A DNA stretch of 63,985 bases, filler included, from Octopus bimaculoides (GCF_001194135.2; 9 parts of 8 records of this genome joined end to end with filler, not necessarily neighbours in it); one strand, 5' to 3'; shown: positions 8,201-49,700, counted from the whole stretch's first letter. A program made the numbers and translations. The notes: a model not told the origin generated them from the letters alone.

Positions 8201-10334
8201 AAGCACAAAGAAGTGAATGTGAATGCATACGCACCCATATGCAAGCGTATGTACAAGCTCATTTATACACAAAAATCTTGAAATATACGTTTTTGTGTAC
8301 ACTCACCCACTGCAACTAATGTATTCAAGCAGATAAACACACACATATATATACACAAATACATACACACAGATGCAGAGAACCACACACAGATACATAA
8401 AACCACACACAGACAAATATTCACAAAAACGTATACACAACCATTAAAGACAATTTTAAAGAATCTCACAGCAAAAAAAAAAAAAAAAACAGGCAAAAAA
8501 TGAAGAGAAGAGTAATAAGAAAAAGAATAGCTTAAGCTCTTAATCCAAGATTCTTAACAATTGGACAATGTGGCACCTTGATTCACATCCGGCCCACACC
8601 GGGTCTATGTATTTATTAAGCAATTTTAGACAGCTAATCACGCCCCGTGTGACATGTCGTTCATTGACAACGCGCTCTGAGACCCGCACTTAGTTAAAAC
8701 GGAAAGGAAAAAATAGATAATAAAGTAAAGCCAAGAGAAAAGAAACACTTTCAGGTATAACAGCACTCTACTTGCTCAACTGAAAGAAAAGGTGGGGGTC
8801 TCTTCGTTCCGAATAGGAAGCAAAAAAGCAACACTAACAATAATAGTTACAACAACAGCAATTATACTACAAAATACCACAAAGAGATGGGGAGAGAAAA
8901 AAAAGACATAATAAAAGAAAAAAAAGAATCTATATACATAGATGAGTGAGTGTTTTTAAGGTTCAATGCCTATTTCTACAAAAAGTGTCGGTCTTTTTAG
9001 ATTGTACTCTTGAAACCGAATGTAAATGTTCAAATGCAGTAGTTGTAAGTTGAAGGTTCAAAATATAAAGAAAATTGTATGAATGAGTAAATGAATAAAG
9101 AGATAAATAAAAAGAAGTAGAGAAAGAGAGAGAGAGAGAGAGAGATGAGAATATAAAGACAAAGTTGAAAACTAGCAAAAGCGAGGATATGTAATGAATA
9201 AATAAAGAAATAGATAAATTGAATCTGAATAGAACACTGAACGGAAAGTAACTGGAATAACTAAAAGTAAGATGAAATAAAATAAAATGAGAACAGACGA
9301 AAGGAAATGAGAATATAATTTGAACAATGAAATGAAAAGAAAAGGATACTGCATAAGAAAGAGATAAGAGCGGCAACTCACTTAGAATGAAGTGTAAGAG
9401 AGCTAAAGTTGTATTGTTATTTCGACACTCACAAAGCTCTATGTAACATCATTTCTGTAATAAATATATGTAGAGATTATTTCTTTTTTAAATGGAAAAC
9501 GCTGGAGTCGTTTACTTATTATTCGCTCTCTTTTACATACCAATGTCAGTCGGCAGTTAAAAGTAATTGGTAAATTAAATGATTGCAACTATATAACAAA
9601 AGCAACAAAAAAAAACTAATAACACTAGTAAAATCTTTTTGTCACACATTTTCTTTCATCTCTCTCTTTTTTATTCTTTTACCAAATTTTCTCTTTATTG
9701 AATGAAATACTGAATCACAGATTTAATGATTAGTGTAGTGACGTCAAACAATTTAATTTTTTTTTCACGTGAACATCAATGAAGGAACATGTCCTGTTGG
9801 CATTATGATGCTGGGTCCACTAAAACACTTTTCGACGTAGTGTACCTGTGGCGAGTTTTTCTCCATGCAGTTTATTGGCTACAGTTCGGAACTGTATTCA
9901 TGAGTAGTAATATATAGAAAAATGCATTTAACTGCCATAACTTACCATTCTATAAGCACCAAATCATTGCAATGTTACGACGGCTTAATCGGTAGATGGA
10001 ACATTTTAATTCGATACCCTTTAACTTTGCCGACAAGTTGATAAATCTTTGAATATAAATTGATTGCCCATTTAATATGCTACCTTTAATATAGAAAATA
10101 TTCAGTATAATTTCAAAGTAATCTTTGAAAGAATAAAAAGTTACAACTTTACTTATATTTTCATTTTCAGGAAAGCAGATATTGTTTGACACATTTTATA
10201 GGCAACTTGTCAAGTTTGAATTATCTCGGAGAAGGCTGAATGAAAAATATTTCAATGTTTAACTAAAACCTTTATGTTGAACATATCTTATTTTATGTTA
10301 TTCAAACTTACTATAATAATTCGATTCAAAATTT

Positions 10335-10535
10335 GGCACAAGGCCAGCGAGTTCAGGAGAAGTGGAGGTCGTTTATATCAACCTCAGTGCTCAACTGGTA
10401 CTTGTTTTGTCGACGCCTAAAGGATGAAAGGCAAAGTCGGCCTCGGCGGAATTTGAACTCAGAACGTAAAAACGGACGAAATGCTGCTGAGAATTTTGCT
10501 TGACGTGCTAATGATTCTGTCAGATCGCTACCCTA
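10335..10535 (-). mobile_element. SINE family A
   Basis: ggatgaaaggcaaagtcggcctcggcggaatttgaactcagaacg core. Confidence 0.85.
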
Positions 10536-14799: not shown

Positions 14800-16260
14800 A
14801 TTAGTTTATTTGATGAACACTTTAATCATTGTTTTCACCAAGGGCAGTCAAGGTCTTCAATTGGTGAAAACAATGACTGAAGTGTTCATTGCTTTTCTTT
14901 TACAACTTTTCAAACACATGCACTCTAGGCTGATGCATCAGGAGAAAGTTGATTTTTTGTAATGGTGCAGCTATTTCTAGTTTAGTTTCAGATTTAGAAT
15001 TTTTATAAAGTATTCTTTTGCCTTTTGTGGTTGATAATTTTCATCTTTCATTTTGTAAAAGAATATTTTCAATCTTCCATTTGTACAAATGTCTGAATGT
15101 TTACTACATGGAACATTTCTTATGCACATTTACAAGACTGGTTAGTTTTGTCCCTGTTTCTCCAATGTAATCTTCATCACACTACAGGGGGCATGTAATG
15201 CAGTAGATGAGGTTTTTTGTTTTGCAATTCATGTTTGCATCCACTTTCAATTCCTTCCCATTCTTGAGTCTTTTGGTTGTTCCTTACTCAATTATTTCAC
15301 ATGTCCCACAACAAGGGCTTCTAGAGTTTGTTACTTGTATAATTTCTTTCTCCAGCATAAACCTTGCCTTTCTTAGAAGTTATTTGATTTGGTATATGTC
15401 TTTGGATGTTGATGACTTGTGATTTTTTAAAATTATGTGTCAGAGATTTGATGATTGACGTAGAATTGGGAGGTATTATTTGGCAGAATGTAGGACATTG
15501 TGGTTCCTAAGATTATGGGTGACTACAATAGAATATTTATATTAGTATTTTCATTTTCACCTTTAGCATGAGTGTTCTCCATAAGGTATAAATCAGGAAT
15601 TCTTTTGCTTTGGTTATGATATGATTTATTAACTTTTTGAGATGTTTCTGTTTTCAAAGGAACATATTTAGTTCTACCAGTTGTTTCTCCCATCTACTGG
15701 TATCTGTAACTATGGAGCATATACGTCTTGCCATATTGGATGGTATGTTAAGGCAGCAAACTGACAGAATCATAAGCACTCCAGGCAGAATGCTTAGCAG
15801 TATTTTGTCTGTCTTCACACACTGAGTTCAAATTCTGCTGAGGTTGACTTTGCCTTTCATTCTTTCAGGATCAATTAAATGAATACCAGTTACACACTGG
15901 GGTCAATGTAATTGATTAACCCCCCCCTCCCCTCAAATTTCAGGCCTTGTACTTATAGTAGAAAGGATATTGAACGGCATGTTCCTTTTTGGATGGGAAG
16001 GGTGACAGGATCTAAAATCTAAATGTTGGTGCATGTCTGTGTCCCTGCAATAGAAACTGGTTGCAAAAATCTCATCTTTTATAGTTATTAGAATGTCCAG
16101 AAAAGGAAATTCCTTTCCATGGTGAACTGAATCAATTCATGAATGCTTTTTATTAATTTAAGGAATCTTGAAAGGTCCTCCTTACTTTTGTTATAAAATA
16201 TGAAGCAGTCATTCAAGAATCTTTTCCAGTTCTCAATTCAATAGGTTTGGAAAATATGAT
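14800..16260 (-). mobile_element. Penelope-like retroelement (RT, Cys-rich linker, GIY-YIG), degenerate and split by a SINE
   Basis: WKRFLNDCFI...FPFLDILI (about 16080-16230), then CGTC...MNCKTKNLIYCITC...CDEDYIGETG (about 15130-15320), ending KEYFIKILNLKLN* (about 14980). Confidence 0.85.
15748..15968 (+). mobile_element. SINE family A inserted into the PLE
   Basis: Family head and core. It interrupts the PLE between the RT and GIY-YIG segments. Confidence 0.8.
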
Positions 16261-17121: not shown

Positions 17122-17320
17122 TCATCATCATCGTTTAACGTCCGCTTTCCATGCTAGCATGGGTTGGACAATTTGACTGAGGACTGGTGAACCAGATGGC
17201 TACACCAGGTTCCAATCTGATTTGGCAGAGTTTCTACAGCTGTATGCCCTTCCTAACGCCAACCACTCCGAGAGTGTAGTAGGTGCTTTTACGTGCCATC
17301 AGCACGAAGGCCAGTCTCAC
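17122..17320 (-). mobile_element. Retroposon 3' end with (CAT)n tail (family D); second copy at 19864-20015
   Basis: catcatcatcgtttaacgtccgctttccatgctagcatgggttggac...gcccttcctaacgccaacc is near-identical in both copies. Confidence 0.75.
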
Positions 17321-20869: not shown

Positions 20870-21760
20870 ATGAACATGATCCTAGACACAATTACTCATT
20901 AATTCAGTTTTATTTCCTCCACATTTGCTGACATCCACAATGGTCTATGTCACCTAGGAGTAACTCGGCAACTGCATTTTATTAGGAATCTTTCCGTTTC
21001 TACACATGAGAAAAGCTTGTGGTTCTCATATGGTTTGTACTGAACTAAAATCTCAGTTCTATCACCCACAAGAAGGAACTCTTACCAAAGCAATAAAGCC
21101 TATGGAACAGCTTAATATGGCCTTCAAGGAAATTTTGCCAACTGTTTTGTGTAATTCATATTTACTCATAATAGTTCTTGAATATTCATGTTTTCATTTT
21201 GCATTTTTATGTCCCAGTTTGTATGCACCAACAGCGATCAGATGTCTGGATTTCCTGCTCAGCTAATGCAAAATTATACTATTATATTATATACACTGAC
21301 TTGCTTCATGTCTAAGGAAGTGAAGGAATATCTCTCCCACTACTTCATATCACCTCTACAATGAATGGACATGTAGAAAGGTTGACCATATGGAAGGTAG
21401 TCTGTTCTGCTTTTGAATAATGTAATGTCAGAGATACACTGAAAACAGGTGCCTTTTGAGGTGCTACATTTCCATACATCACTGTTCTGTACAACAAATA
21501 CAACTCATAAACGTTTCTTTGCATTCCAATGCTGGTCTTCCCATGGAAATTCACAAGAGGATAGTGAATTTTATGGGGAGAGTGACAGTGGAACAACTAA
21601 TGACTCCCAGACCAGCACTAAGGAAGTTCACAAGAAGCAACAAAATAAACCACTTGTAGTTCATGTTGTAGACCAAGAACTCCTAAACAGCAATCCAACA
21701 TATGCAAACATCAGGTATCCAGATGAGCAAGAGTCTATAGTTTCATTACTGACTCGATGC
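20870..21760 (+). mobile_element. Ty3/Gypsy integrase remnant (H2C2 zinc finger, core, C-terminal domain)
   Basis: HNGLCHLGVTRQLHFI...VCTELKSQFYHPQEGTLTKAIKPMEQLNMAFK...LEYS.F.FAF.CP...TNTTHKRFF.FQ...NPTYANIRYPD.QESIVSL. Many stops and frameshifts. Confidence 0.8.
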
Positions 21761-22732
21761 CTTGTTTCAAAGTCCATGAAAACCTTCACATCTCTTGTAG
21801 AACAAAATAAAAGAATCCCAATAGTACTTGGACCATTTTATTAAGATATACCACAGTGTGAAGAATCATGAAATAGCAACTTCCCATGAACTTTGGAGAC
21901 GCAAATATGTATCAAAGCTATTTGATACTTTTGGAATTTTTCTCTTCAAAGAAGGAAAAACACAATGTTACTGTTGGTGTGTATAGTATGGGTTTCTGTA
22001 CTTTCAACTGCAAGTAGTCTGGGCCACTATATTATAAAAGTAATTGCATATAAAACGCCATGATATTTATATAATGGTAATCTTCCAGTTTCGAGAGGTA
22101 AAAGAAATAAATAAAAATATTCAAGGGAAATAACTGAACGACTTACCAGTATTATCCGTACTACTTTTTCTCTAAAACAGCATGCGATGGAATTTTTTTT
22201 TTGGATCTAGTTCAAAACGGGGGCACCAGTTTTGATATATGTTTTATGTAGTGTTTTTGGTACCGAAAGACTTTCAAACTTCGTATACTTATCTATTTTG
22301 TGTTATAGAACAGAAAAAAATTTTTGTATTCAAAGTTATTTCATGTAAAAAATTGTCTTATTTCAATAATTTCAACCAATCACTGACAAGTATTCAGCTG
22401 TTTACAGTTACTCCTTTGGCAGTTTAAGTGGTGTAAAGCGTATTTAATCTCCATTACTTCTGACATTTTGCAGAGAGACAACACATGTCTTTTTCTTGTG
22501 CTAAGGAGGATATATTAATTTTTCCATCGAGATTTTGTTTGCTGTTGCGGTGTGAGTTCGTGTCTGTCTAACTCTTTGTATTGAATAACTGTTTAAATAA
22601 CTGTTGGTATANNNNNNNNNNNNNNNNNNNNNNNNNNNNNNNNNNNNNNNNNNNNTTAATTAATTAANNNNNNNNNNNNNNNNNNNNNNNNNNNNNNNNN
22701 NNNNNNNNNNNTGTATATATGGATATATATGC

Positions 22733-22773
<41 letters not shown>

Positions 22774-22829
22774 GTGAAACTCATATATGCATACATATAT
22801 AAACATGCTCGAATACTCACACAAACACA

Positions 22830-41429: not shown

Positions 41430-41870
41430 TAACGGAAAAGAGTGGCGGTTGTGGAAGCGTGAGAAAGGGATTTGTTAAGATGTGAGATGTGAGAACGGGG
41501 TTTTTAAGAAAACGCGTGAAATGTTTGAAGTCAAGTTTCTAGGTAAAGGCTTATTGGTAAAGAGAACAATACAAACGTTGGTTAAGAAGTGGAGCGCTTA
41601 GGGGATCAGTGCAAAACTCCCCCAAAACAAAGTGACACAACAGTTCGAACGCTGGACATTACTCAGGACGTTCGCCAAACGATTGTTCGAAATCCAAAGA
41701 AGCCAGGACATGAATTGGCGCAGCAGTCTCACATAAGCAGGAGATCATTGCAACGAATGTTGGAAAGTGTAAAATTGAAGCCATATCGTTTCACATGTAA
41801 ACAGCAATTAAAAGTGGGCGACACGAGCAAACGAGTAAACTATTACACATATCTTCTGAATAGCAGCTAC
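41430..41870 (+). mobile_element. Tc1/mariner-superfamily transposase N-terminal (HTH) relic
   Basis: DVRQTIVRNPKKP.HELAQQSHISRRSLQRMLESVKLKPYRF..KQQL..GD..KRV.Y. Confidence 0.55.
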
Positions 41871-41894
41871 ACGCAGTCATATTGACACATGTTG

Positions 41895-42275: not shown

Positions 42276-44583
42276 ATATTAACACAAAGACACTTGAAAA
42301 GGAAAGGCTGGTGGATTGTTTTGTTTTTTTTGCGTGTATAAGTTTATTTCTGTATTTATAAGATGCTACAGAACCTGGGCTACTTTTTCGTGCGCCACTC
42401 CTTATTAACCTGTTTTTCAGCTTGGTGAAGACTAACCCGAGGCTAAACAACAACACTATAAGCATATGCAGTAACAGTAACATCAATAATAACTATAATA
42501 TTAATCCTCAGCAGCAACATTGTTAGCGTAACAACATCATTGGCAACATTAGTAACAACAACAACAACAACAATAACAATAGCAACAACACCCACAGCAA
42601 TAACAACTGCACCAGCAGCGGCAAAAGCTAATTAAAGATCCAACGAGAGACCGTCGACAGGATCGCAAAAAACCGCAAAAATTAGTAACCAAATTTATTT
42701 CGAATCACACTTTATGTCGGACGTTTTGTGCAATACGATCAGAGGTTGGGGTTTGTCACGTGCAGCAACTTAAAGAAATTTGAGAGTTTGAAGAAAGAGA
42801 GTAGTAATTAACCAAATATGTTAATTAATTACTACTTCTTTCAGGATTACTAAAGTGTCGTGTAACATAACGCACCAAACTTTTTGGGATTTTTGTCTTT
42901 CATCAGTGCGTGAGAATCAGAAAAATAAAAAAATAAGTGATATCATGTCTTTCTCTGTATCTCATTATATACCAGAGAGCATCTATTTTTTCTTTTTTTT
43001 TTTTTTTTTNNNNNNNNNNNNNNNNNNNNNNNNNNNNNNNNNNNNNNNNNNNNNNNNNNNNNNNNNNNNNNNNNNNNNNNNNNNNNNNNNNNNNNNNNNN
43101 NNNNNNNNNNNNNNNNNNNNNNNNNNNNNNNNNNNNNNNNNNNNNNNNNNNNNNNNNNNNNNNNNNNNNNNNNNNNNNNNNNNNNNNNNNNNNNNNNNNN
43201 NNNNNNNNNNNNNNNNNNNNNNNNNNNNNNNNNNNNNNNNNNNNNNNNNNNNNNNNNNNNNNNNNNNNNNNNNNNNNNNNNNNNNNNNNNNNNNNNNNNN
43301 NNNNNNNNNNNNNNNNNNNNNNNNNNNNNNNNNNNNNNNNNNNNNNNNNNNNNNNNNNNNNNNNNNNNNNNNNNNNNNNNNNNNNNNNNNNNNNNNNNNN
43401 NNNNNNNNNNNNNNNNNNNNNNNNNNNNNNNNNNNNNNNNNNNNNNNNNNNNNNNNNNNNNNNNNNNNNNNNNNNNNNNNNNNNNNNNNNNNNNNNNNNN
43501 NNNNNNNNNNNNNNNNNNNNNNNNNNNNNNNNNNNNNNNNNNNNNNNNNNNNNNNNNNNNNNNNNNNNNNNNNNNNNNNNNNNNNNNNNNNNNNNNNNNN
43601 NNNNNNNNNNNNNNNNNNNNNNNNNNNNNNNNNNNNNNNNNNNNNNNNNNNNNNNNNNNNNNNNNNNNNNNNNNNNNNNNNNNNNNNNNNNNNNNNNNNN
43701 NNNNNNNNNNNNNNNNNNNNNNNNNNNNNNNNNNNNNNNNNNNNNNNNNNNNNNNNNNNNNNNNNNNNNNNNNNNNNNNNNNNNNNNNNNNNNNNNNNNN
43801 NNNNNNNNNNNNNNNNNNNNNNNNNNNNNNNNNNNNNNNNNNNNNNNNNNNNNNNNNNNNNNNNNNNNNNNNNNNNNNNNNNNNNNNNNNNNNNNNNNNN
43901 NNNNNNNNNNNNNNNNNNNNNNNNNNNNNNNNNNNNNNNNNNNNNNNNNNNNNNNNNNNNNNNNNNNNNNNNNNNNNNNNNNNNNNNNNTATATATGAAT
44001 TAATTAGAGAGATACAAATGACAATCCAATAATTTATTTATATTATAACATAATATACTATGAATATAATATAATATAACATAAATAATAATTGCTTATG
44101 CTATATTATATTCATAGAGGCGCAATGGACCAGTGGTTAGGCCGTAGAAAAAAATCGAGTTGGTGTTTATGAATGTATTCCATAACAGAGGGATTTTCTG
44201 AGTTTATTTCAGGACAGACTTCTTTGTATGTAAGCATGTATGTATGTATGTATGTTATCAACCAGTTTCATTTCTGTATTTCTTGCCAATAGAGAAAGAG
44301 CCGGACTCTAACATAGATTCAAGGCTCCTTCATTGGAACTTTTATCAACATCATCTAGGTATTTGTGCATATGTGTGTGTGTGTGTGTGTGTGTGCAGTA
44401 TTTGGTGTTAGTGTATGCGCAGATGTGTATGTTTTGTTTTATGGATGCGTTTTTATGTATATATTTTCATGTCTAGGCGTATGCATATGTATTTATGCAT
44501 GCATGCAGGTATATACATTTACAGACACACTTTTGATGTAAATTCATAGATTTAATTGGCGAAAAAATATATATATAATTATG

Positions 44584-45646
44584 TCAATATGTTTTGGAAC
44601 CAAAATACCTGACACTTCTTGGAAGCCTCCTCCTCGGATGATCACTCGCGTCATCAGTTGGTGGCGGCTGGGATTCCTCTGCATCATAGAATTTCGTCAT
44701 TTCTCTATCGTAAGGTGGTGGTGGGATGACGGCCCATTCGTAGTTCTGTGTGCAGTGCTGGCCCAATACCATTCCTTTCACGCCACAGTGTGGATCATAG
44801 CTGCGCCAATCGTCAGAGTGGTCGCGTTGATAGCTAGGGTATCTGTTTCGTCGGTTGCTCCGACGATAGCAAATGCTACCTCCATCATGATAACCGCCAT
44901 GATGGCAGCCTCCATTGTGGTGACCGCCATGATGGCCTCCATTGTCGCCCTCCCCATGACGGTGACCTCCATGGTGACCTCCTCTATGGTGACCTTCTCC
45001 ATGGTGACCTCCTCCATGATGATCTCCTCCATGGTGACCTCCTCCATAGGGACCACCTCTATGGTGACCTCCTCCATGGTTGCCCTCCCCATGAAGGCTT
45101 CCCCTATTATGCCCTTCTCCACGGTGACCTCCATAAGGTCGCTCCTCACGATGGTGACCGCCATGATGTCTCCCTCCATGGTGACCTCGTCCATGATGCA
45201 TTCCTCCATGGTGGCCACCTCCATGATGGCGGCCTCCATGATGGCCACCTCGATTGTGCCCGTCTCCATCGTAAGGCCCTTCCTCATAACCATCATAGTT
45301 AACTCGCTCATAATCTCCACGCTCACCTCCGTACTGACGTTCATCGTAATCTCGTCTAGAATTATACTCATGCCGACGTCCACCTTCGTATCTAAGGCTA
45401 TCTCGTCCAAAATCGCGTCGGATGCTGAAAGGCCGCCGAAGAGAGCTTTGCTGGCGTCGCTGATCGGAATTTCCATTCTGTTGGCCAGAATCTTGTCCAC
45501 CGTTTTGAGCTCTATTTCGCTGGTTCAAATGCTGACCTCTGACGCGGTCGGGAAGCCGTCCAGAACGTCGCCAATTTCGTTGAACGCTTGGATTATCGTA
45601 TACTTCTGCAGAGTTCTGATCAGGATTGTTTTCCGATTTCTTAAAA
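44584..45646 (-). CDS. Terminal coding exon of an uncharacterised Gly/His-repeat, Arg/Tyr/Asp-rich protein (353 codons plus stop)
   Basis: Frame is open from a strong acceptor (ttttctctttctctctatttttgattggttaaaatag|) to TGA. GC-rich against its flanks. Repeat variation is mostly third-position (GGA/GGT/GGC, CAT/CAC) in this frame. ATTAAA lies about 30 nt after the stop. Confidence 0.8.
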
Positions 45647-45824
45647 CTATTTTAACCAATCAAAAATAGAGAGAAAGAGAAAATTACGAGTCATGACAAT
45701 CAACGACACGAATAGACATAAATCTTCAGCAAATGCTGATGACTCTGATGAAGGAGCGTCTGGGTGGTCATTCAATATGCTAGAAATAACAGCTAAATCT
45801 CCATCCAACCATACACACACATAC

Positions 45825-45965
45825 AGGCTGCCCCCACAAATTTAGTCGACAAAATTCACTCACAAGGCCCGGGGCTATAGTAGAAGACATTTGCCCAAGG
45901 TGCCACGCAGTGGGACTGAACTCGAAACTACATAGTTGCGAAACGAGCTTCTTAACGACACAGGC
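45825..45965 (-). mobile_element. SINE family B head
   Basis: gaagacatttgcccaaggtgccacgcagtgggactgaac. Confidence 0.75.
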
Positions 45966-46227
45966 GTGTCCGTATGTTTGCATTTGCAGCCGGCAGGGGG
46001 CTTCCTTAGTAACAGTTGGTGAGAGAGGAAAAGGCAGAATCTATAACCGTTTATTGATTTTTTTCCTTTTTTTTTGTGGGGGTGCATTATGAGAGGAAGT
46101 TAAGTTTATGCTGATGCTTGTCCTGAATGTTAGAAACGAATTGAAGCTTGCAAAGGGTTCCAAATTCTTGCAACGGAATGTTTGCAAAGGGTTGTATTCC
46201 GATAAAGTAGTCAAATTTCTTGCAACC

Positions 46228-46556
46228 GGAAGGCGGCGAGCTGACAGAAACTATTGCTTAGCGGTATTTCGTCTGTCTTTACGTTCTGAGTTCAAATTTC
46301 GCCGAGGTCAACTTTGCCTTTCATCCTTTCGGGGTCGATAAATTAAGTACCAGTTACGTACTGAGGTCGATCTAATTGACTGGCCGCCCCTCCCCCAAAA
46401 TTTCGGGTTTGTGCCTAGAGTAGAAAATATTATTAGTTATCCTTCCAATATGTATTTCAGTGGTGGAGGTCATACAATATTTTTATTGTTTTAAGGCCGC
46501 GTGCTGGCAGAACCGTTAGCACGCCGGGCAAAATGCTTAGCGGTATTTCGTCTGTC
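46228..46556 (+). mobile_element. Two tandem SINE family A copies (second runs into a gap)
   Basis: Family head and core at 46228-46432 and again at 46495-46556. Confidence 0.85.
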
Positions 46557-46953
46557 NNNNNNNNNNNNNNNNNNNNNNNNNNNNNNNNNNNNNNNNNNNN
46601 NNNNNNNNNNNNNNNNNNNNNNNNNNNNNNNNNNNNNNNNNNNNNNNNNNNNNNNNNNNNNNNNNNNNNNNNNNNNNNNNNNNNNNNNNNNNNNNNNNNN
46701 NNNNNNNNNNNNNNNNNNNNNNNNNNNNNNNNNNNNNNNNNNNNNNNNNNNNNNNNNNNNNNNNNNNNNNNNNNNNNNNNNNNNNNNNNNNNNNNNNNNN
46801 NNNNNNNNNNNNNNNNNNNNNNNNNNNNNNNNNNNNNNNNNNNNNNNNNNNNNNNNNNNNNNNNNNNNNNNNNNNNNNNNNNNNNNNNNNNNNNNNNNNN
46901 NNNNNNNNNNNNNNNNNNNNNNNNNNNNNNNNNNNNNNNNNNNNNNNNNNNNN

Positions 46954-46987
<34 letters not shown>

Positions 46988-47344
46988 GTCTGTATGTATA
47001 TATATGCAAATGAGCGCACTTACACACACACACACCACACGCATACACACACACATACATGCACATACACATGCATACACACGCATACCGACAAACAGAA
47101 ACACACTGACAATATTGAATTAACCAAATATTAAGAGTTCATTTTTCATAAAAACAACGGAATCAAACAGCTATGTATACCTTTTTCTATTTAAAGTCAC
47201 TAACAGTATGATCCTACTTGGATTTGGTTGCTATTTCTAGCATATAGAATGACCAAGTAGAGGCTCCCTCTTTGGCTCGTTGCTGCAGCATGTTGCAGAG
47301 ATAATAATAATAATAATGATAATGATAATAATGATAATCCTTTT

Positions 47345-47532
47345 TACTATAGGCGTAAGATCTGAAATTTTGGAGGAAGGAGGTAAGTCGATTACATCGA
47401 CCTCAGTGTATCACTGGTGCTTAATTTATCCAACCCGAAAGGATGAAATGCAAAGTGAACAACGGCGGAATTTGAACTCAGAACGTAATGACAGACGAAA
47501 TACTGCTAAGCATTTCGCCCGGCGTGCTAACG
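47345..47532 (-). mobile_element. SINE family A
   Basis: Reverse-complement core and head. Confidence 0.85.
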
Positions 47533-47559
47533 TTTCTGCCAGCTCGCCGCCAACAAACT

Positions 47560-47741
47560 ATCAATTATTACAATTATTATTATCATTGTTGTTGTTGTTG
47601 TTGGTGGTGGAGGTGTTGGTGGTGGTGGTGGCGGTGATTTGGTTACTGCTGTTGCTGTTGTTTTGGAGGTTGTTATTCTTGTTAGCACCTTCATCATCAT
47701 CATCATCATCATCATTACCATCATCATTATTGTTATTATTA

Positions 47742-47775
<34 letters not shown>

Positions 47776-47942
47776 AAAATTTGATAAATAGTGCTTATAT
47801 CAAAAATTAGGAACATTTTAGAAAACATGCAGAAAACTAATCAAGGTTAATAGAAACGCTCAAAAATTTAACGGTTATTGGTGTTGTTATAACTGCCGTT
47901 ATTATTATTATTATTGATGTTATTATCATAACTATTATTATT

Positions 47943-47973
<31 letters not shown>

Positions 47974-48010
47974 TTATTATTGTTGTTGTTGTTGTTATTA
48001 TGATTATTAC
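47560..48010. repeat. (ATT)n/(CAT)n/(GTT)n trinucleotide mosaic; a pure (ATT)n tract also lies at 49585-49700
   Basis: Direct inspection. Confidence 0.9.
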
Positions 48011-48190
48011 ATAATGCGTTGGACTGACAAAATCGGTAAAACATCAGAAAAAAAATGTTTCGAACAATTGGTTCCGATCCAAACGTTCTGAGCTCAAGTA
48101 TCACCGAGGTCAATATTGTAGTTTTATTTCTCCGAGGTCAATAAAATAAACTAGAAACCAGCTACTGGGGGAACCAAAGTAATCACTCAC

Positions 48191-48300
48191 AGCCGATCCG
48201 AGCGCTTCCAGACGGCTGCGAAACGTGATATCGACCCCGCGCACGGGGTGCTACCGGCAGCTGAAGCAAGGCTGGCACCAGTTTTTCTTCTGTCTAGCAG
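48191..48300 (-). CDS. Candidate internal exon of the Gly/His gene (LLDRRKTGASLASAAGSTPCAGSISRFAAVWKRSDR-L)
   Basis: ttttgccccag| acceptor and CT|gtgagt donor; 110 nt. The phase-2 end fits the phase of the 45646 acceptor. GC-rich. Confidence 0.45.
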
Positions 48301-48816
48301 CTGGGGCAAAATGTTGAATGTTGGGACGAAGCGAAAACGATTGAAGCCAAAACGCTTTTCTCTTTCGATCAAGTATTGTCATAACAGTATCGTCCAGGCT
48401 ATCGGATGTTATTACACCTCGCTGGTCACAATGCGCTTCACGTTATTTCAGCCTTCGAATGATGCGATCCCTCTGGTTAGGCGGACAGGCCAAACATTCC
48501 TCCCTGATCCGTCAAAGGCCAACTCATTTGTAACTGAATGAGCTGAAACAACGTGAAGTGATGTGCTTTGTTGAAGAACACAACGCGCCGCACGGTGGTC
48601 CGGGAATCGAACCCAATGATCTTGCGATCGCAAGTTTCAATGTCTTAACCACAAGGCCACGCGCTTTTACGTGTACTCAATACAAAAATAAATTCTTCTA
48701 AGTAAATACAAATTATGATCAGAAACTGGTTTAGTATTTCATGTAGGAAAGCAGCCAATCATTAGATCAATAATCCTAGCATTCTACATATATATATATA
48801 ATATATATCTATACAC

Positions 48817-48850
<34 letters not shown>

Positions 48851-49393
48851 NNNNNNNNNNNNNNNNNNNNNNNNNNNNNNNNNNNNNNNNNNNNNNNNNN
48901 NNNNNNNNNNNNNNNNNNNNNNNNNNNNNNNNNNNNNNNNNNNNNNNNNNNNNNNNNNNNNNNNNNNNNNNNNNNNNNNNNNNNNNNNNNNNNNNNNNNN
49001 NNNNNNNNNNNNNNNNNNNNNNNNNNNNNNNNNNNNNNNNNNNNNNNNNNNNNNNNNNNNNNNNNNNNNNNNNNNNNNNNNNNNNNNNNNNNNNNNNNNN
49101 NNNNNNNNNNNNNNNNNNNNNNNNNNNNNNNNNNNNNNNNNNNNNNNNNNNNNNNNNNNNNNNNNNNNNNNNNNNNNNNNNNNNNNNNNNNNNNNNNNNN
49201 NNNNNNNNNNNNTTTTTTTTTTTTTTTTTTTTTTTTTTGCAAGATAGAATGTTCCAAAGATATTTGCGCAAGTCAAGGTTAGAAGACACTGGTACAGCAC
49301 AGAGGCCTTCTTCGATACAAATACATCCCAAAAATATTGGCCAATCAGAACTAGAAGAATTATGTGACACCTGTTCTTTACTAAGCCACGTAC

Positions 49394-49450
49394 CAAAGAC
49401 CTTATTCTTGCTTTTTTTGAGTGAGAGCCTAGCCTGCATTCAAAGTGACA
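49394..49450 (-). CDS. Candidate upstream exon of the Gly/His gene (CHFECRLGSHSKKARIRSL)
   Basis: ccccag| and TTG|gtacgt; 57 nt, phase 0-0. The frame is also open upstream to an ATG at 49522. Confidence 0.3.
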
Positions 49451-49582
49451 CTGGGGTACAAATATACGAAGGCTGATATATCCGCCATAACTACCCGTCT
49501 GATAAAGGTACACGATGCGCATGCGTCACAACGATACCGTGATGTCATAACAAGACAAACTGTACATAACCTTGCATAATTA

Positions 49583-49700
<118 letters not shown>

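What the first reader, a model, noticed from the sequence alone, without database searches (positions are those of the whole stretch)
44584..49522. Uncharacterised Gly/His-repeat protein: candidate metal-binding biomaterial or condensate protein
Seen: a 353-codon terminal exon with an R/N/Q-rich start, an R/D/Y/G-rich block (RRDYDERQYGGERGDYERVNYDGYEEGPY), about 130 aa of 5-residue GGxHH-type repeats with about 16 HH doublets (44875-45270), and a tail with Cys residues and a PPPPY motif. Variation between repeats is mainly synonymous in this frame, which argues for selection on the protein. Two upstream exons (48191-48300, 49394-49450, or extended to the ATG at 49522) splice in phase, giving up to 433 aa with no obvious signal peptide. 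Established: Gly/His-rich proteins harden squid beak and polychaete jaws through coacervation or Zn binding, and Gly/His-rich peptides can be antifungal. The GGHH period here differs from the GHGxY squid-beak motif. Function is inference only.
Basis: partly seen in the sequence, partly recalled or inferred. Interest (0 to 1): 0.8.

Follow-up and report, generated by a model that had tools for sequence, protein, structure and literature searches.

The report
His-rich exon in octopus TGFBI-like gene
The Gly/His-repeat reading frame is a real, conserved, fast-evolving coding exon, but it lies inside the first intron of the octopus TGFBI/periostin-like matrix-protein gene and probably adds a secreted, pH- and metal-sensitive histidine-rich arm to that protein, rather than being a separate signal-less gene.

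Summary
The gene structure is not as described.

- **Exon limits:** the exon is 44609-45646 (minus strand, 1038 nt). It has a conserved donor AG|GT at 44608/44607, so it is internal, not terminal.
- **Existing annotation:** it is already in RefSeq as XP_014784788.1, "filaggrin-like", from Octopus bimaculoides. That model starts with a signal-peptide exon and continues into the exon encoding ..ECCPGYSRKIGDFGCP.
- **Host gene:** an Octopus transcript for a 700-aa EMI + FAS1 protein, homologous to TGFBIp/periostin, uses both of those flanking exons.
- **Position:** in O. vulgaris the orthologous exon sits in the 22-kb intron 1 of that gene.
one of the two, tested in O. vulgaris, carries a frameshift and has lost its donor there; neither is in the RefSeq model.
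- **Coding evidence:** this is the only stop-free frame in three species. All 9 exon indels are multiples of three, against 7 of 42 in the introns. Splice phase and an IPPPPYDR core persist in a distant species whose introns no longer align.
- **Evolution:** the exon diverges faster than its own introns.

No transcript was seen and function is inferred. The RefSeq C-terminus looks like an exon-skipping artefact.

The parts
44609..45646 (-). Coding exon of 1038 nt (a multiple of 3). It begins with the third base of a Ser codon and ends with the first two bases (AG) of an Arg codon. It encodes 345 full codons.
   Evidence: Translation. 99% identical to residues 45-390 of RefSeq XP_014784788.1. 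It is the only frame without stops in O. bimaculoides, O. vulgaris and the L002 species. No stop-free frame in 1000 shuffles.
45647..45685 (-). 3' splice site: pyrimidine-rich tract ttctctttctctctatttttgattggttaaaatAG, with an in-frame TAA just upstream.
   Evidence: Sequence. Same context (FLIG*NSF) in O. vulgaris and same phase in L002 (ttaaAG|G). Joining exon 1 (..TTC AG) to this site reproduces ..YPFSFKKSE of the RefSeq protein.
44607..44608 (-). 5' splice site GT (CAG|GTATTT).
   Evidence: Identical donor in O. vulgaris and CAG|GTATCT in L002. The RefSeq model continues ..RSVR|IIEDAEK...
45358..45645 (-). Arg/Asn/Gln-rich, low-complexity N-terminal segment of the exon. It is the fastest-evolving part.
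   Evidence: Between the two octopuses: 63% amino-acid identity, dN/dS 0.85, non-CpG divergence 18% against 8.3% in introns, and 4 of 4 indels are multiples of 3.
45271..45357 (-). Arg/Asp/Tyr/Gly block RRDYDERQYGGERGDYERVNYDGYEEGPY. L002 has an acidic/Tyr-rich block in the equivalent position.
44878..45270 (-). 131-aa Gly/His repeat block. The unit is GGxHH with DNA consensus GGAGGAGGTCACCAT. It holds 16 HH doublets, 40 His and 55 Gly.
   Evidence: A His-rich block is retained in O. vulgaris (15 HH) and L002 (12 HH), although the repeat unit itself is not. Calculated charge is +1.4 at pH 8.1 and +32.6 at pH 5.5.
44701..44784 (-). Most conserved core of the tail: GVKGMVLGQHCTQNYEWAVIPPPPYDRE.
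   Evidence: Invariant G..GM..G.HC...Y....IPPPPYDR across three species. dN/dS is 0.37 for the wider tail core CYRR..PPPPYDRE. It is the only non-FAS1-gene stretch still detectable between L002 and O. vulgaris.
44609..44634 (-). Polybasic end of the exon, RRRLPRSV(R), ending exactly at the splice junction. It is a candidate proprotein-convertase site.
   Evidence: O. vulgaris has RRRIPRSVR| and L002 has RRGKKRSR|. Cleavage is inference only.

Best explanation
The finding is a genuine protein-coding exon at 44609-45646 on the minus strand. It lies in the long first intron of the octopus homologue of TGFBIp/periostin, which is built from a signal peptide, an EMI/CROPT domain and FAS1 domains.

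The exon is spliced to that gene's signal-peptide exon. Because its phase is symmetric, it can join either exon 2 (predicted 1046 aa) or exon 4 (predicted 988 aa) in frame. The product is a secreted matrix or mucus protein carrying a roughly 345-residue disordered, cationic arm rich in Arg, Gly and His.

Inferred mechanism: about 16 HH doublets separated by flexible Gly act as a pH- and Zn/Cu/Ni-dependent switch. The block is nearly neutral in seawater and strongly cationic below pH 6 or when metal-loaded. It would then bind or cross-link polyanions such as sulfated glycans, mucins or microbial surfaces. The conserved polybasic end may allow the arm to be cut off.

Shown: the exon, its position, its phases and its conservation. 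Inferred: actual splicing, secretion of this isoform, and all biochemistry.
For: - The RefSeq protein P0001 contains the exon between MATRQPLTLVLAVVCSIVCYCGVSVIAG.. and IIEDAEKMEELEIMECCPGYSRKIGDFGCPI.
- Both flanking peptides are identical in P0003. P0003 is a 700-aa protein from an RNA-derived contig, L001. It scores Pfam Fasciclin E=3e-81 and matches the TGFBIp structure 5nv6 at E=3e-73.
- In O. vulgaris (L003) the gene order is exon 1 at 10001-10131, the His exon at 21474-22820, exon 2 at 32352, exon 3 at 32949 and exon 4 at 33758.
- The whole piece is collinear with L003 16567-28412, which is intron 1.
- The phases fit. Exon 1 and the His exon both end in AG, and both possible joins give a single terminal stop.
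- Coding signal: this is the only frame stop-free in three species. 9 of 9 indels are multiples of 3, against 7 of 42 in introns (p=4e-6). dN/dS is 0.58 overall and 0.37 in the tail core.
- A third, distant species (L002) keeps a His-rich exon with the same splice phases and the IPPPPYDR core. It lies upstream of exon-2-like and exon-3 sequences, while the introns no longer align.
- The leader is hydrophobic and is predicted helical at residues 6-26. The rest of the protein is predicted disordered.
- TGFBI-like protein is found in O. vulgaris skin mucus (PMC11431876).
- HH-containing pentapeptide repeats (GHHPH) of histidine-rich glycoprotein bind Zn and Cu (PMC5372734).
Against: - No transcript or peptide containing the exon was found. 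Two word-index searches and one exhaustive search returned only the RefSeq model. The one assembled transcript fetched (L001) has exons 1-2-3-4-5 without it.
- The RefSeq model may be partly ab initio. Its last 10 residues are exon 6 read out of frame after skipping the 188-nt exon 5, so it is weak evidence for splicing.
- Constraint on amino acids between the two octopuses is weak. N-terminal dN/dS is 0.85, and the exon diverges faster than its introns.
- Metal binding, pH switching and cleavage are untested.
Confidence: 0.55

Rival explanations
1. The exon makes a stand-alone short secreted His-rich protein. This would be either the 432-aa RefSeq form (exon 1 + His exon + exon 4 + a frameshifted end) or a form where the exon is terminal, reading through the donor to the TGA at 44584 with a nearby ATTAAA. 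It would share only the promoter and leader with the FAS1 gene.
For: The RefSeq model exists. ATTAAA lies about 35 nt after the read-through stop. The first 130 nt after the donor are 95% identical between the octopuses, above the intron average. The polybasic exon end would suit a pro-peptide or peptide product.
Against: The RefSeq end is exon 6 out of frame after skipping exon 5, which is typical of a model forced across missing sequence. From the O. vulgaris translation, the ATTAAA appears to be ATTAAT there (read by eye, not checked directly). The donor and its phase are conserved even in the distant L002 species, where the read-through peptide is unrelated.
Confidence: 0.2
2. It is a structural biomaterial or coacervate protein of the squid-beak HBP or worm-jaw type. 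His-rich repeats would drive phase separation and metal or covalent cross-linking in beak, radula or sucker lining.
For: It has a secretory leader, a Gly/His-rich pentapeptide repeat and Tyr-rich flanks. His-rich proteins are known in cephalopod hard tissues (PMC11931252).
Against: HBPs are hydrophobic, with Gly+Ala+His above 50% and pI near 6. This exon has Ala 1.4%, Gly+His 34%, Arg 13% and pI 9.1. The repeat unit is not conserved between species. The exon sits in a matricellular gene whose product is found in skin mucus.
Confidence: 0.12
3. It is not a functional exon. On this view it is an intronic low-complexity repeat whose purine-rich composition keeps a frame open by chance, picked up ab initio by the annotation pipeline.
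For: No transcript evidence was found. The exon diverges faster than its introns. In O. bimaculoides an antisense frame is also open.
Against: 0 of 1000 shuffles give any open frame in each of three species. The antisense frame is broken in the other two species. All 9 indels are multiples of 3, against 17% in introns. Splice sites, phases and the IPPPPYDR core survive in a species whose introns are unalignable.
Confidence: 0.08

Closest known systems
TGFBIp (beta-ig-h3) / periostin family (signal peptide, EMI/CROPT domain, four FAS1 domains)
   Same: The exon lies in intron 1 of the octopus homologue and shares its leader exon and the CCPGY..GC exon in the RefSeq model. The host protein P0003 aligns to human TGFBIp at E=3e-73 and to periostin at E=1.6e-55.
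   Different: To my knowledge, no vertebrate member has a His-rich N-terminal insert; periostin's known alternative splicing is C-terminal. That point rests on my own knowledge and was not checked here. The exon itself has no FAS1 or EMI similarity.
Histidine-rich glycoprotein, His-rich region (GHHPH pentapeptide repeats)
   Same: Secreted protein with tandem 5-residue repeats, each carrying an HH doublet. In HRG these bind Zn2+ and Cu2+ and drive ligand binding (PMC5372734).
   Different: The unit here is GGxHH with no proline. There are no cystatin domains and no sequence homology. This is an analogy of mechanism only.
Squid histidine-rich beak proteins (HBP1-3)
   Same: Cephalopod, secreted, Gly/His-rich, repetitive and disordered.
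   Different: This exon is Arg-rich and Ala-poor, with pI 9.1 and GGxHH repeats.
Sea urchin Transformer (Sp185/333) immune proteins
   Same: Leader plus Gly-rich and His-rich regions. They are disordered, highly variable secreted immune effectors (PMC8268236). The rapid divergence here is reminiscent of them.
   Different: No homology was tested or expected. Trf proteins form a multigene family, not an exon within a FAS1 gene.
Filaggrin (the RefSeq name for this model)
   Same: His/Arg/Gly/Ser-rich low-complexity composition.
   Different: No S100 EF-hand domain and no filaggrin repeats; Pfam finds nothing. The name reflects composition only.

Membership tests
TGFBIp/periostin family (host gene) | Multiple FAS1 (fasciclin) domains | tested here: met
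   P0003, which shares exon 1 and exon 4 with the model containing the window exon, scores Pfam Fasciclin E=3e-81 over 5 stretches. It also matches PDB 5nv6 TGFBIp at E=3e-73.
TGFBIp/periostin family (host gene) | N-terminal Cys-rich EMI/CROPT domain ending in CCPGY..GC | tested here: inconclusive
   Pfam EMI scores 20.6 bits against a cut-off of 25 on P0003 residues 61-124. ECCPGYSRKIGDFGCP aligns to the TGFBIp/periostin motif at E=1.3 only.
TGFBIp/periostin family (host gene) | The window exon is part of this gene's mature transcript | tested here: inconclusive
   Position in intron 1, strand and phases all fit, and the RefSeq model joins it to exons 1 and 4. No assembled transcript or peptide with the exon was found.
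EMI domain (as an identity for the exon's Cys-containing tail) | Sequence similarity to the EMI N-terminal half with its conserved Cys | tested here: not met
   No Pfam hit at E<=10. BLASTP against exons 2-3 of P0003 gives no alignment. Two of the three tail Cys are absent in the L002 species.
Squid histidine-rich beak proteins | GHGxY-type repeats; Gly+Ala+His above 50%; hydrophobic; pI about 6 | tested here: not met
   The repeat is GGxHH. Gly+His is 34%, Ala 1.4%, Arg 13% and pI 9.1, against the description in PMC11931252.
Histidine-rich glycoprotein | GHHPH repeats flanked by Pro-rich regions; N-terminal cystatin-like domains | tested here: not met
   There is no Pro in the repeat unit and no Pfam domain of any kind. 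Only the HH-pentapeptide principle is shared.
Filaggrin / S100 fused-type proteins | N-terminal S100 EF-hand pair and long filaggrin repeats | tested here: not met
   Pfam scan of the full RefSeq protein finds 0 families. The N-terminus is a cleavable-type hydrophobic leader.
Metal-binding His-rich domain (functional class) | Measured binding of Zn/Cu/Ni and a pH-dependent change of interaction | not testable with these tools
   Only calculated charge is available: the repeat block is +1.4 at pH 8.1 and +32.6 at pH 5.5.

The most novel reading that the evidence does not exclude
Cephalopods evolved a lineage-specific cassette exon rich in His, Gly and Arg, possibly under positive selection. It converts the conserved TGFBIp/periostin-like matrix protein into a pH- and zinc-switchable adhesive or antimicrobial mucus/ECM protein. 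The His-rich arm would be released at the conserved polybasic site that coincides with the exon junction. This would be a new way of building a histidine-rich effector by alternative splicing of a matricellular gene.
Probability: 0.2. Interest if true: 0.65.

Novelty: new variant of a known kind. Interest (0 to 1): 0.45.

Why it matters
If the exon is spliced as inferred, octopuses make two very different secreted products from one ancient adhesion gene. One is the ordinary EMI + FAS1 protein. The other carries a long histidine-rich, charge-switching arm.

That would give cephalopod biomaterials and mucosal-defence research a new His-rich sequence class, GGxHH, distinct from beak HBPs and suckerins. 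It would also be a clear case of a fast-evolving disordered exon kept in frame for a long time.

It also corrects the public annotation. The 'filaggrin-like' name is compositional, and the model's C-terminus appears to be an exon-skipping frameshift.

Tried and rejected
Neither is in the RefSeq model. In O. vulgaris, 48191-48300 has a frameshift and has lost its donor; 49394-49522 was not compared.
2. **Other exons of the gene inside the piece.** tblastn of P0001 and P0003 finds none.
3. **Known family for the tail or the whole protein.** Pfam finds nothing. PDB gives only E=1.3 hits, and those fall on the next exon's CCPGY motif.
4. **Tail as a substitute N-terminal half of the EMI domain.** The Cys spacing looked similar, but BLASTP finds nothing and two of the Cys are missing in L002.
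5. **More relatives or transcripts.** The word-index search with the tail gave none. The search with the O. vulgaris exon gave only the RefSeq model. The exact look-up of P0001 found no contig.
6. **Metagenome scan.** It returned one locus, L004. This holds an IIPPPPYDRE motif in an unrelated GC-rich ORF with no His block, no FAS1 exon and no Pfam family. I treat it as a pattern-seeded chance match.
7. **Structure.** AlphaFold on the single sequence gave mean pLDDT 39, with only the leader helix predicted. No fold search was worthwhile.
8. **RNA genes.** No tRNA or Rfam family is present in the piece.
9. **Literature.** There is no paper on the accession or on 'filaggrin-like' in octopus.
10. 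**Antisense ORF 44581-45669.** It is broken in both other species.


Full report
**1. What is in the sequence**

On the minus strand one frame is open from the AG at 45647-45648 to a TGA at 44584-44586. It encodes, in order:

- an Arg/Asn/Gln-rich stretch;
- the block RRDYDERQYGGERGDYERVNYDGYEEGPY (45271-45357);
- a 131-residue Gly/His block (44878-45270) with 55 Gly, 40 His and 16 HH doublets;
- a tail with Cys residues and IPPPPYDRE.

Tandem Repeats Finder reports a 15-nt period with 20.5 copies. The unit consensus is GGAGGAGGTCACCAT, which encodes GGGHH. Among 16 in-register units, 18 codon differences from the consensus are synonymous and 12 are not. 25 of 41 base differences fall at third positions.

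**2. The assembly gaps**

The piece is collinear, on the same strand and in the same order, with O. vulgaris locus L003 16567-28412.

- The flanks of gap 46557-46953 map to L003 19681 and 20332.
- The flanks of gap 48851-49212 map to L003 16991 and 17283.
- The third gap, 43010-43989, also lies between collinear blocks.

All three are intronic, and no supported reading frame crosses them. Each gap abuts a microsatellite.

**3. The exon is already in a public model, and that model changes the gene structure**

A search of the protein database gives a 99% match to XP_014784788.1, 'PREDICTED: filaggrin-like [Octopus bimaculoides]', 432 aa.

- The model starts with MATRQPLTLVLAVVCSIVCYCGVSVIAGPVTFEDAFNSSRYP. 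This is a hydrophobic leader, with a Kyte-Doolittle peak of 2.85 and a predicted helix at residues 6-26.
- It leaves the exon at a donor CAG|GTATTT (44609|44608) and continues IIEDAEKMEELEIMECCPGYSRKIGDFGCPI.

The exon is therefore 44609-45646 (1038 nt) and internal. Neither flanking exon is in the piece.

In O. vulgaris, 48191-48300 carries a 1-nt deletion and its donor has become GCGGGG.

**4. The host gene**

An exhaustive phmmer search with the last 132 residues of the model found P0003.

- P0003 is a 700-aa protein from an RNA-derived 2429-nt contig, L001.
- It belongs to the same 90% cluster as O. vulgaris CAI9739244.1, 'FAS1 domain-containing protein'.
- It has the identical leader exon and the identical IIEDAEK..GCPI exon.
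- Between them it carries RVSFGNGNGRAWWKG and PNVCKNK..CKTT, the N-terminal half of an EMI domain. After them come the fasciclin domains.
- Scores: Pfam Fasciclin E=3e-81; EMI 20.6 bits, below the cut-off of 25; human TGFBIp structure E=3e-73; periostin E=1.6e-55.

On the O. vulgaris chromosome the exon order is as follows:

| Exon | L003 position |
|---|---|
| Exon 1 | 10001-10131 |
| His exon | 21474-22820 |
| Exon 2 | starts 32352 |
| Exon 3 | starts 32949 |
| Exon 4 | 33758-33853 |
| Exon 5 | 188 nt, from about 34927 |
| Exon 6 | starts 36161 |

The finding is therefore an exon in the 22-kb first intron of the octopus TGFBIp/periostin-like gene.

**5. Splice logic**

- Exon 1 ends ..TTC AG and the His exon ends ..GTC AG. 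Both carry two bases of a codon.
- Exon 2 starts with C and exon 4 starts with A.
- Joining exon 1 + His exon + exon 2 onward gives 1046 aa with one terminal stop.
- Joining exon 1 + His exon + exon 4 onward gives 988 aa with one terminal stop.

Both a simple cassette and a swap for exons 2-3 are possible, and the data here cannot choose between them.

The RefSeq model's last residues, GDVVEERHNLF*, are exon 6 read out of frame after skipping the 188-nt exon 5. In so gap-rich an assembly this looks like a modelling artefact. The model is therefore weak evidence for how the exon is really spliced.

**6. Is it really coding?**

Four independent lines say yes.

- **Open frame.** Only this frame is free of stops in O. 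bimaculoides, O. vulgaris and a third species. The full-length antisense ORF of O. bimaculoides has 2 stops in O. vulgaris and 6 in the third species. In each species, 0 of 1000 dinucleotide shuffles give any stop-free frame.
- **Indels.** Between the two octopuses, all 9 exon indels are multiples of three, including 4 of 4 in the non-repetitive part. In flanking introns the figure is 7 of 42 (Fisher p=3.8e-6 and p=0.002).
- **Substitutions.** dN/dS is 0.58 overall, 0.44 in the repeats, 0.45 in the tail and 0.37 in the tail core.
- **Deep conservation.** In genomic contig L002 (ENA ERZ21867824, species unknown) the introns no longer align with Octopus. A 585-nt exon there (9778-10362) has the same acceptor and donor phases. 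It shows the same layout:
  - an acidic/Tyr block;
  - a His-rich block with 12 HH;
  - the core G.[KR]GM..G.HC...Y....IPPPPYDR;
  - an acidic stretch;
  - a polybasic end.

  It lies upstream of an exon-2-like sequence (14953-15006) and of exon 3 (17149-17274).

**7. Unusual evolution**

The exon changes faster than its own introns. Divergence is 14.6% against 9.9% overall. At non-CpG sites it is 13.2% against 8.3% (p=3e-5). The N-terminal part reaches 18%.

Amino-acid identity is 74% in the exon, against 95% for the FAS1 isoform. O. vulgaris also has an extra in-frame run of about 13 GRRTDDDN units before the polybasic end. The repeat unit differs in L002 while the richness in HH persists.

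Selection therefore seems to act on frame, composition and the short tail core, not on most individual residues. This pattern fits disordered secreted proteins, including host-defence and material proteins. It could reflect positive selection, but alignment noise in low-complexity sequence cannot be excluded.

**8. Likely function (inference)**

The exon product is predicted disordered (mean pLDDT 39) and basic (pI 9.1). The calculated charge of the repeat block rises from +1.4 at pH 8.1 to +32.6 at pH 5.5.

The closest working analogy is the His-rich region of histidine-rich glycoprotein, with its GHHPH pentapeptides. That region binds Zn and Cu and governs ligand binding (PMC5372734).

Squid beak HBPs differ in composition: they are hydrophobic and Ala-rich, with pI about 6 (PMC11931252). 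TGFBI-like protein occurs in O. vulgaris skin mucus (PMC11431876).

I therefore favour a switchable polycationic binding or cross-linking arm on a secreted matrix or mucus protein. It may be released at the conserved polybasic junction (RRRLPRSVR| in O. bimaculoides, RRRIPRSVR| in O. vulgaris, RRGKKRSR| in L002).

**9. Limits**

No transcript or peptide with the exon was found in the databases available. The assembled transcript that was fetched (L001) lacks the exon. Tissue, splice partner, secretion of this isoform and all biochemistry are untested. The species of L002 is unknown.

**10. Verdict**

The interpretation as a metal-binding His-rich protein is plausible but unproven. The thing is best described as a conserved, rapidly evolving His/Gly/Arg-rich alternative exon of the octopus TGFBIp/periostin-like gene. 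It is of moderate interest, as a new variant of known kinds.

Noticed in passing
window 44581-45669 (+): A 362-aa antisense ORF spans the whole exon in O. bimaculoides. It has 2 stops in O. vulgaris and 6 in the L002 species, so it is a by-product of the sense codon composition.
   Followed up: yes
P0001 residues 422-432; L001 724-753: The RefSeq model's C-terminus GDVVEERHNLF* is exon 6 of the FAS1 gene read out of frame after skipping the 188-nt exon 5. This is probably an annotation artefact of the gapped assembly.
   Followed up: partly
L003 about 22460-22790 (O. vulgaris): The orthologous exon has about 13 extra in-frame tandem copies of GRRTDDDN that are absent from O. bimaculoides. This is rapid repeat turnover inside the exon.
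   Followed up: partly
window 44609-45646 against flanking introns: The exon diverges faster than the surrounding introns between the two octopuses: 13.2% against 8.3% at non-CpG sites, p=3e-5. Yet every indel is in frame.
   Followed up: partly
window 46255-46556 and 47334-47564: Inverted copies, 79-87% complementary, of an interspersed SINE-like element flank the 46557-46953 gap. Further copies lie in O. vulgaris L003 at 15104-15262 and 26353-26520.
   Followed up: no
window about 48580-48650 (-): A tRNA-like stretch (..GTGGTTAAGAC..GGTTCGATTCCCGG..) was not called by ARAGORN or Rfam. It is probably the head of a tRNA-derived SINE.
   Followed up: partly
window 46954-47000, 48815-48850, 49213-49240, 49576-49700: Each of the two upstream assembly gaps (46557-46953, 48851-49212) abuts a simple repeat: (TA)n, (GT)n and poly-A. 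A long (TAA)n run ends the piece. These repeats probably caused the gaps.
   Followed up: no
P0002 (marine eukaryote transcript, ERR1711892): An unrelated 268-aa protein carries a run of GGGHH pentapeptides in its middle. The same repeat unit has therefore arisen elsewhere.
   Followed up: no
L004 5998-6120 (SDBT01005927.1): The motif IIPPPPYDRE occurs in an unrelated GC-rich ORF with no His block and no Pfam family. It is probably a pattern-seeded chance match.
   Followed up: partly
window 41589-41885 (+): A 98-aa ORF shows only weak helix-turn-helix similarity (Pfam E about 0.1). It may be a decayed transposase remnant in the intron.
   Followed up: partly
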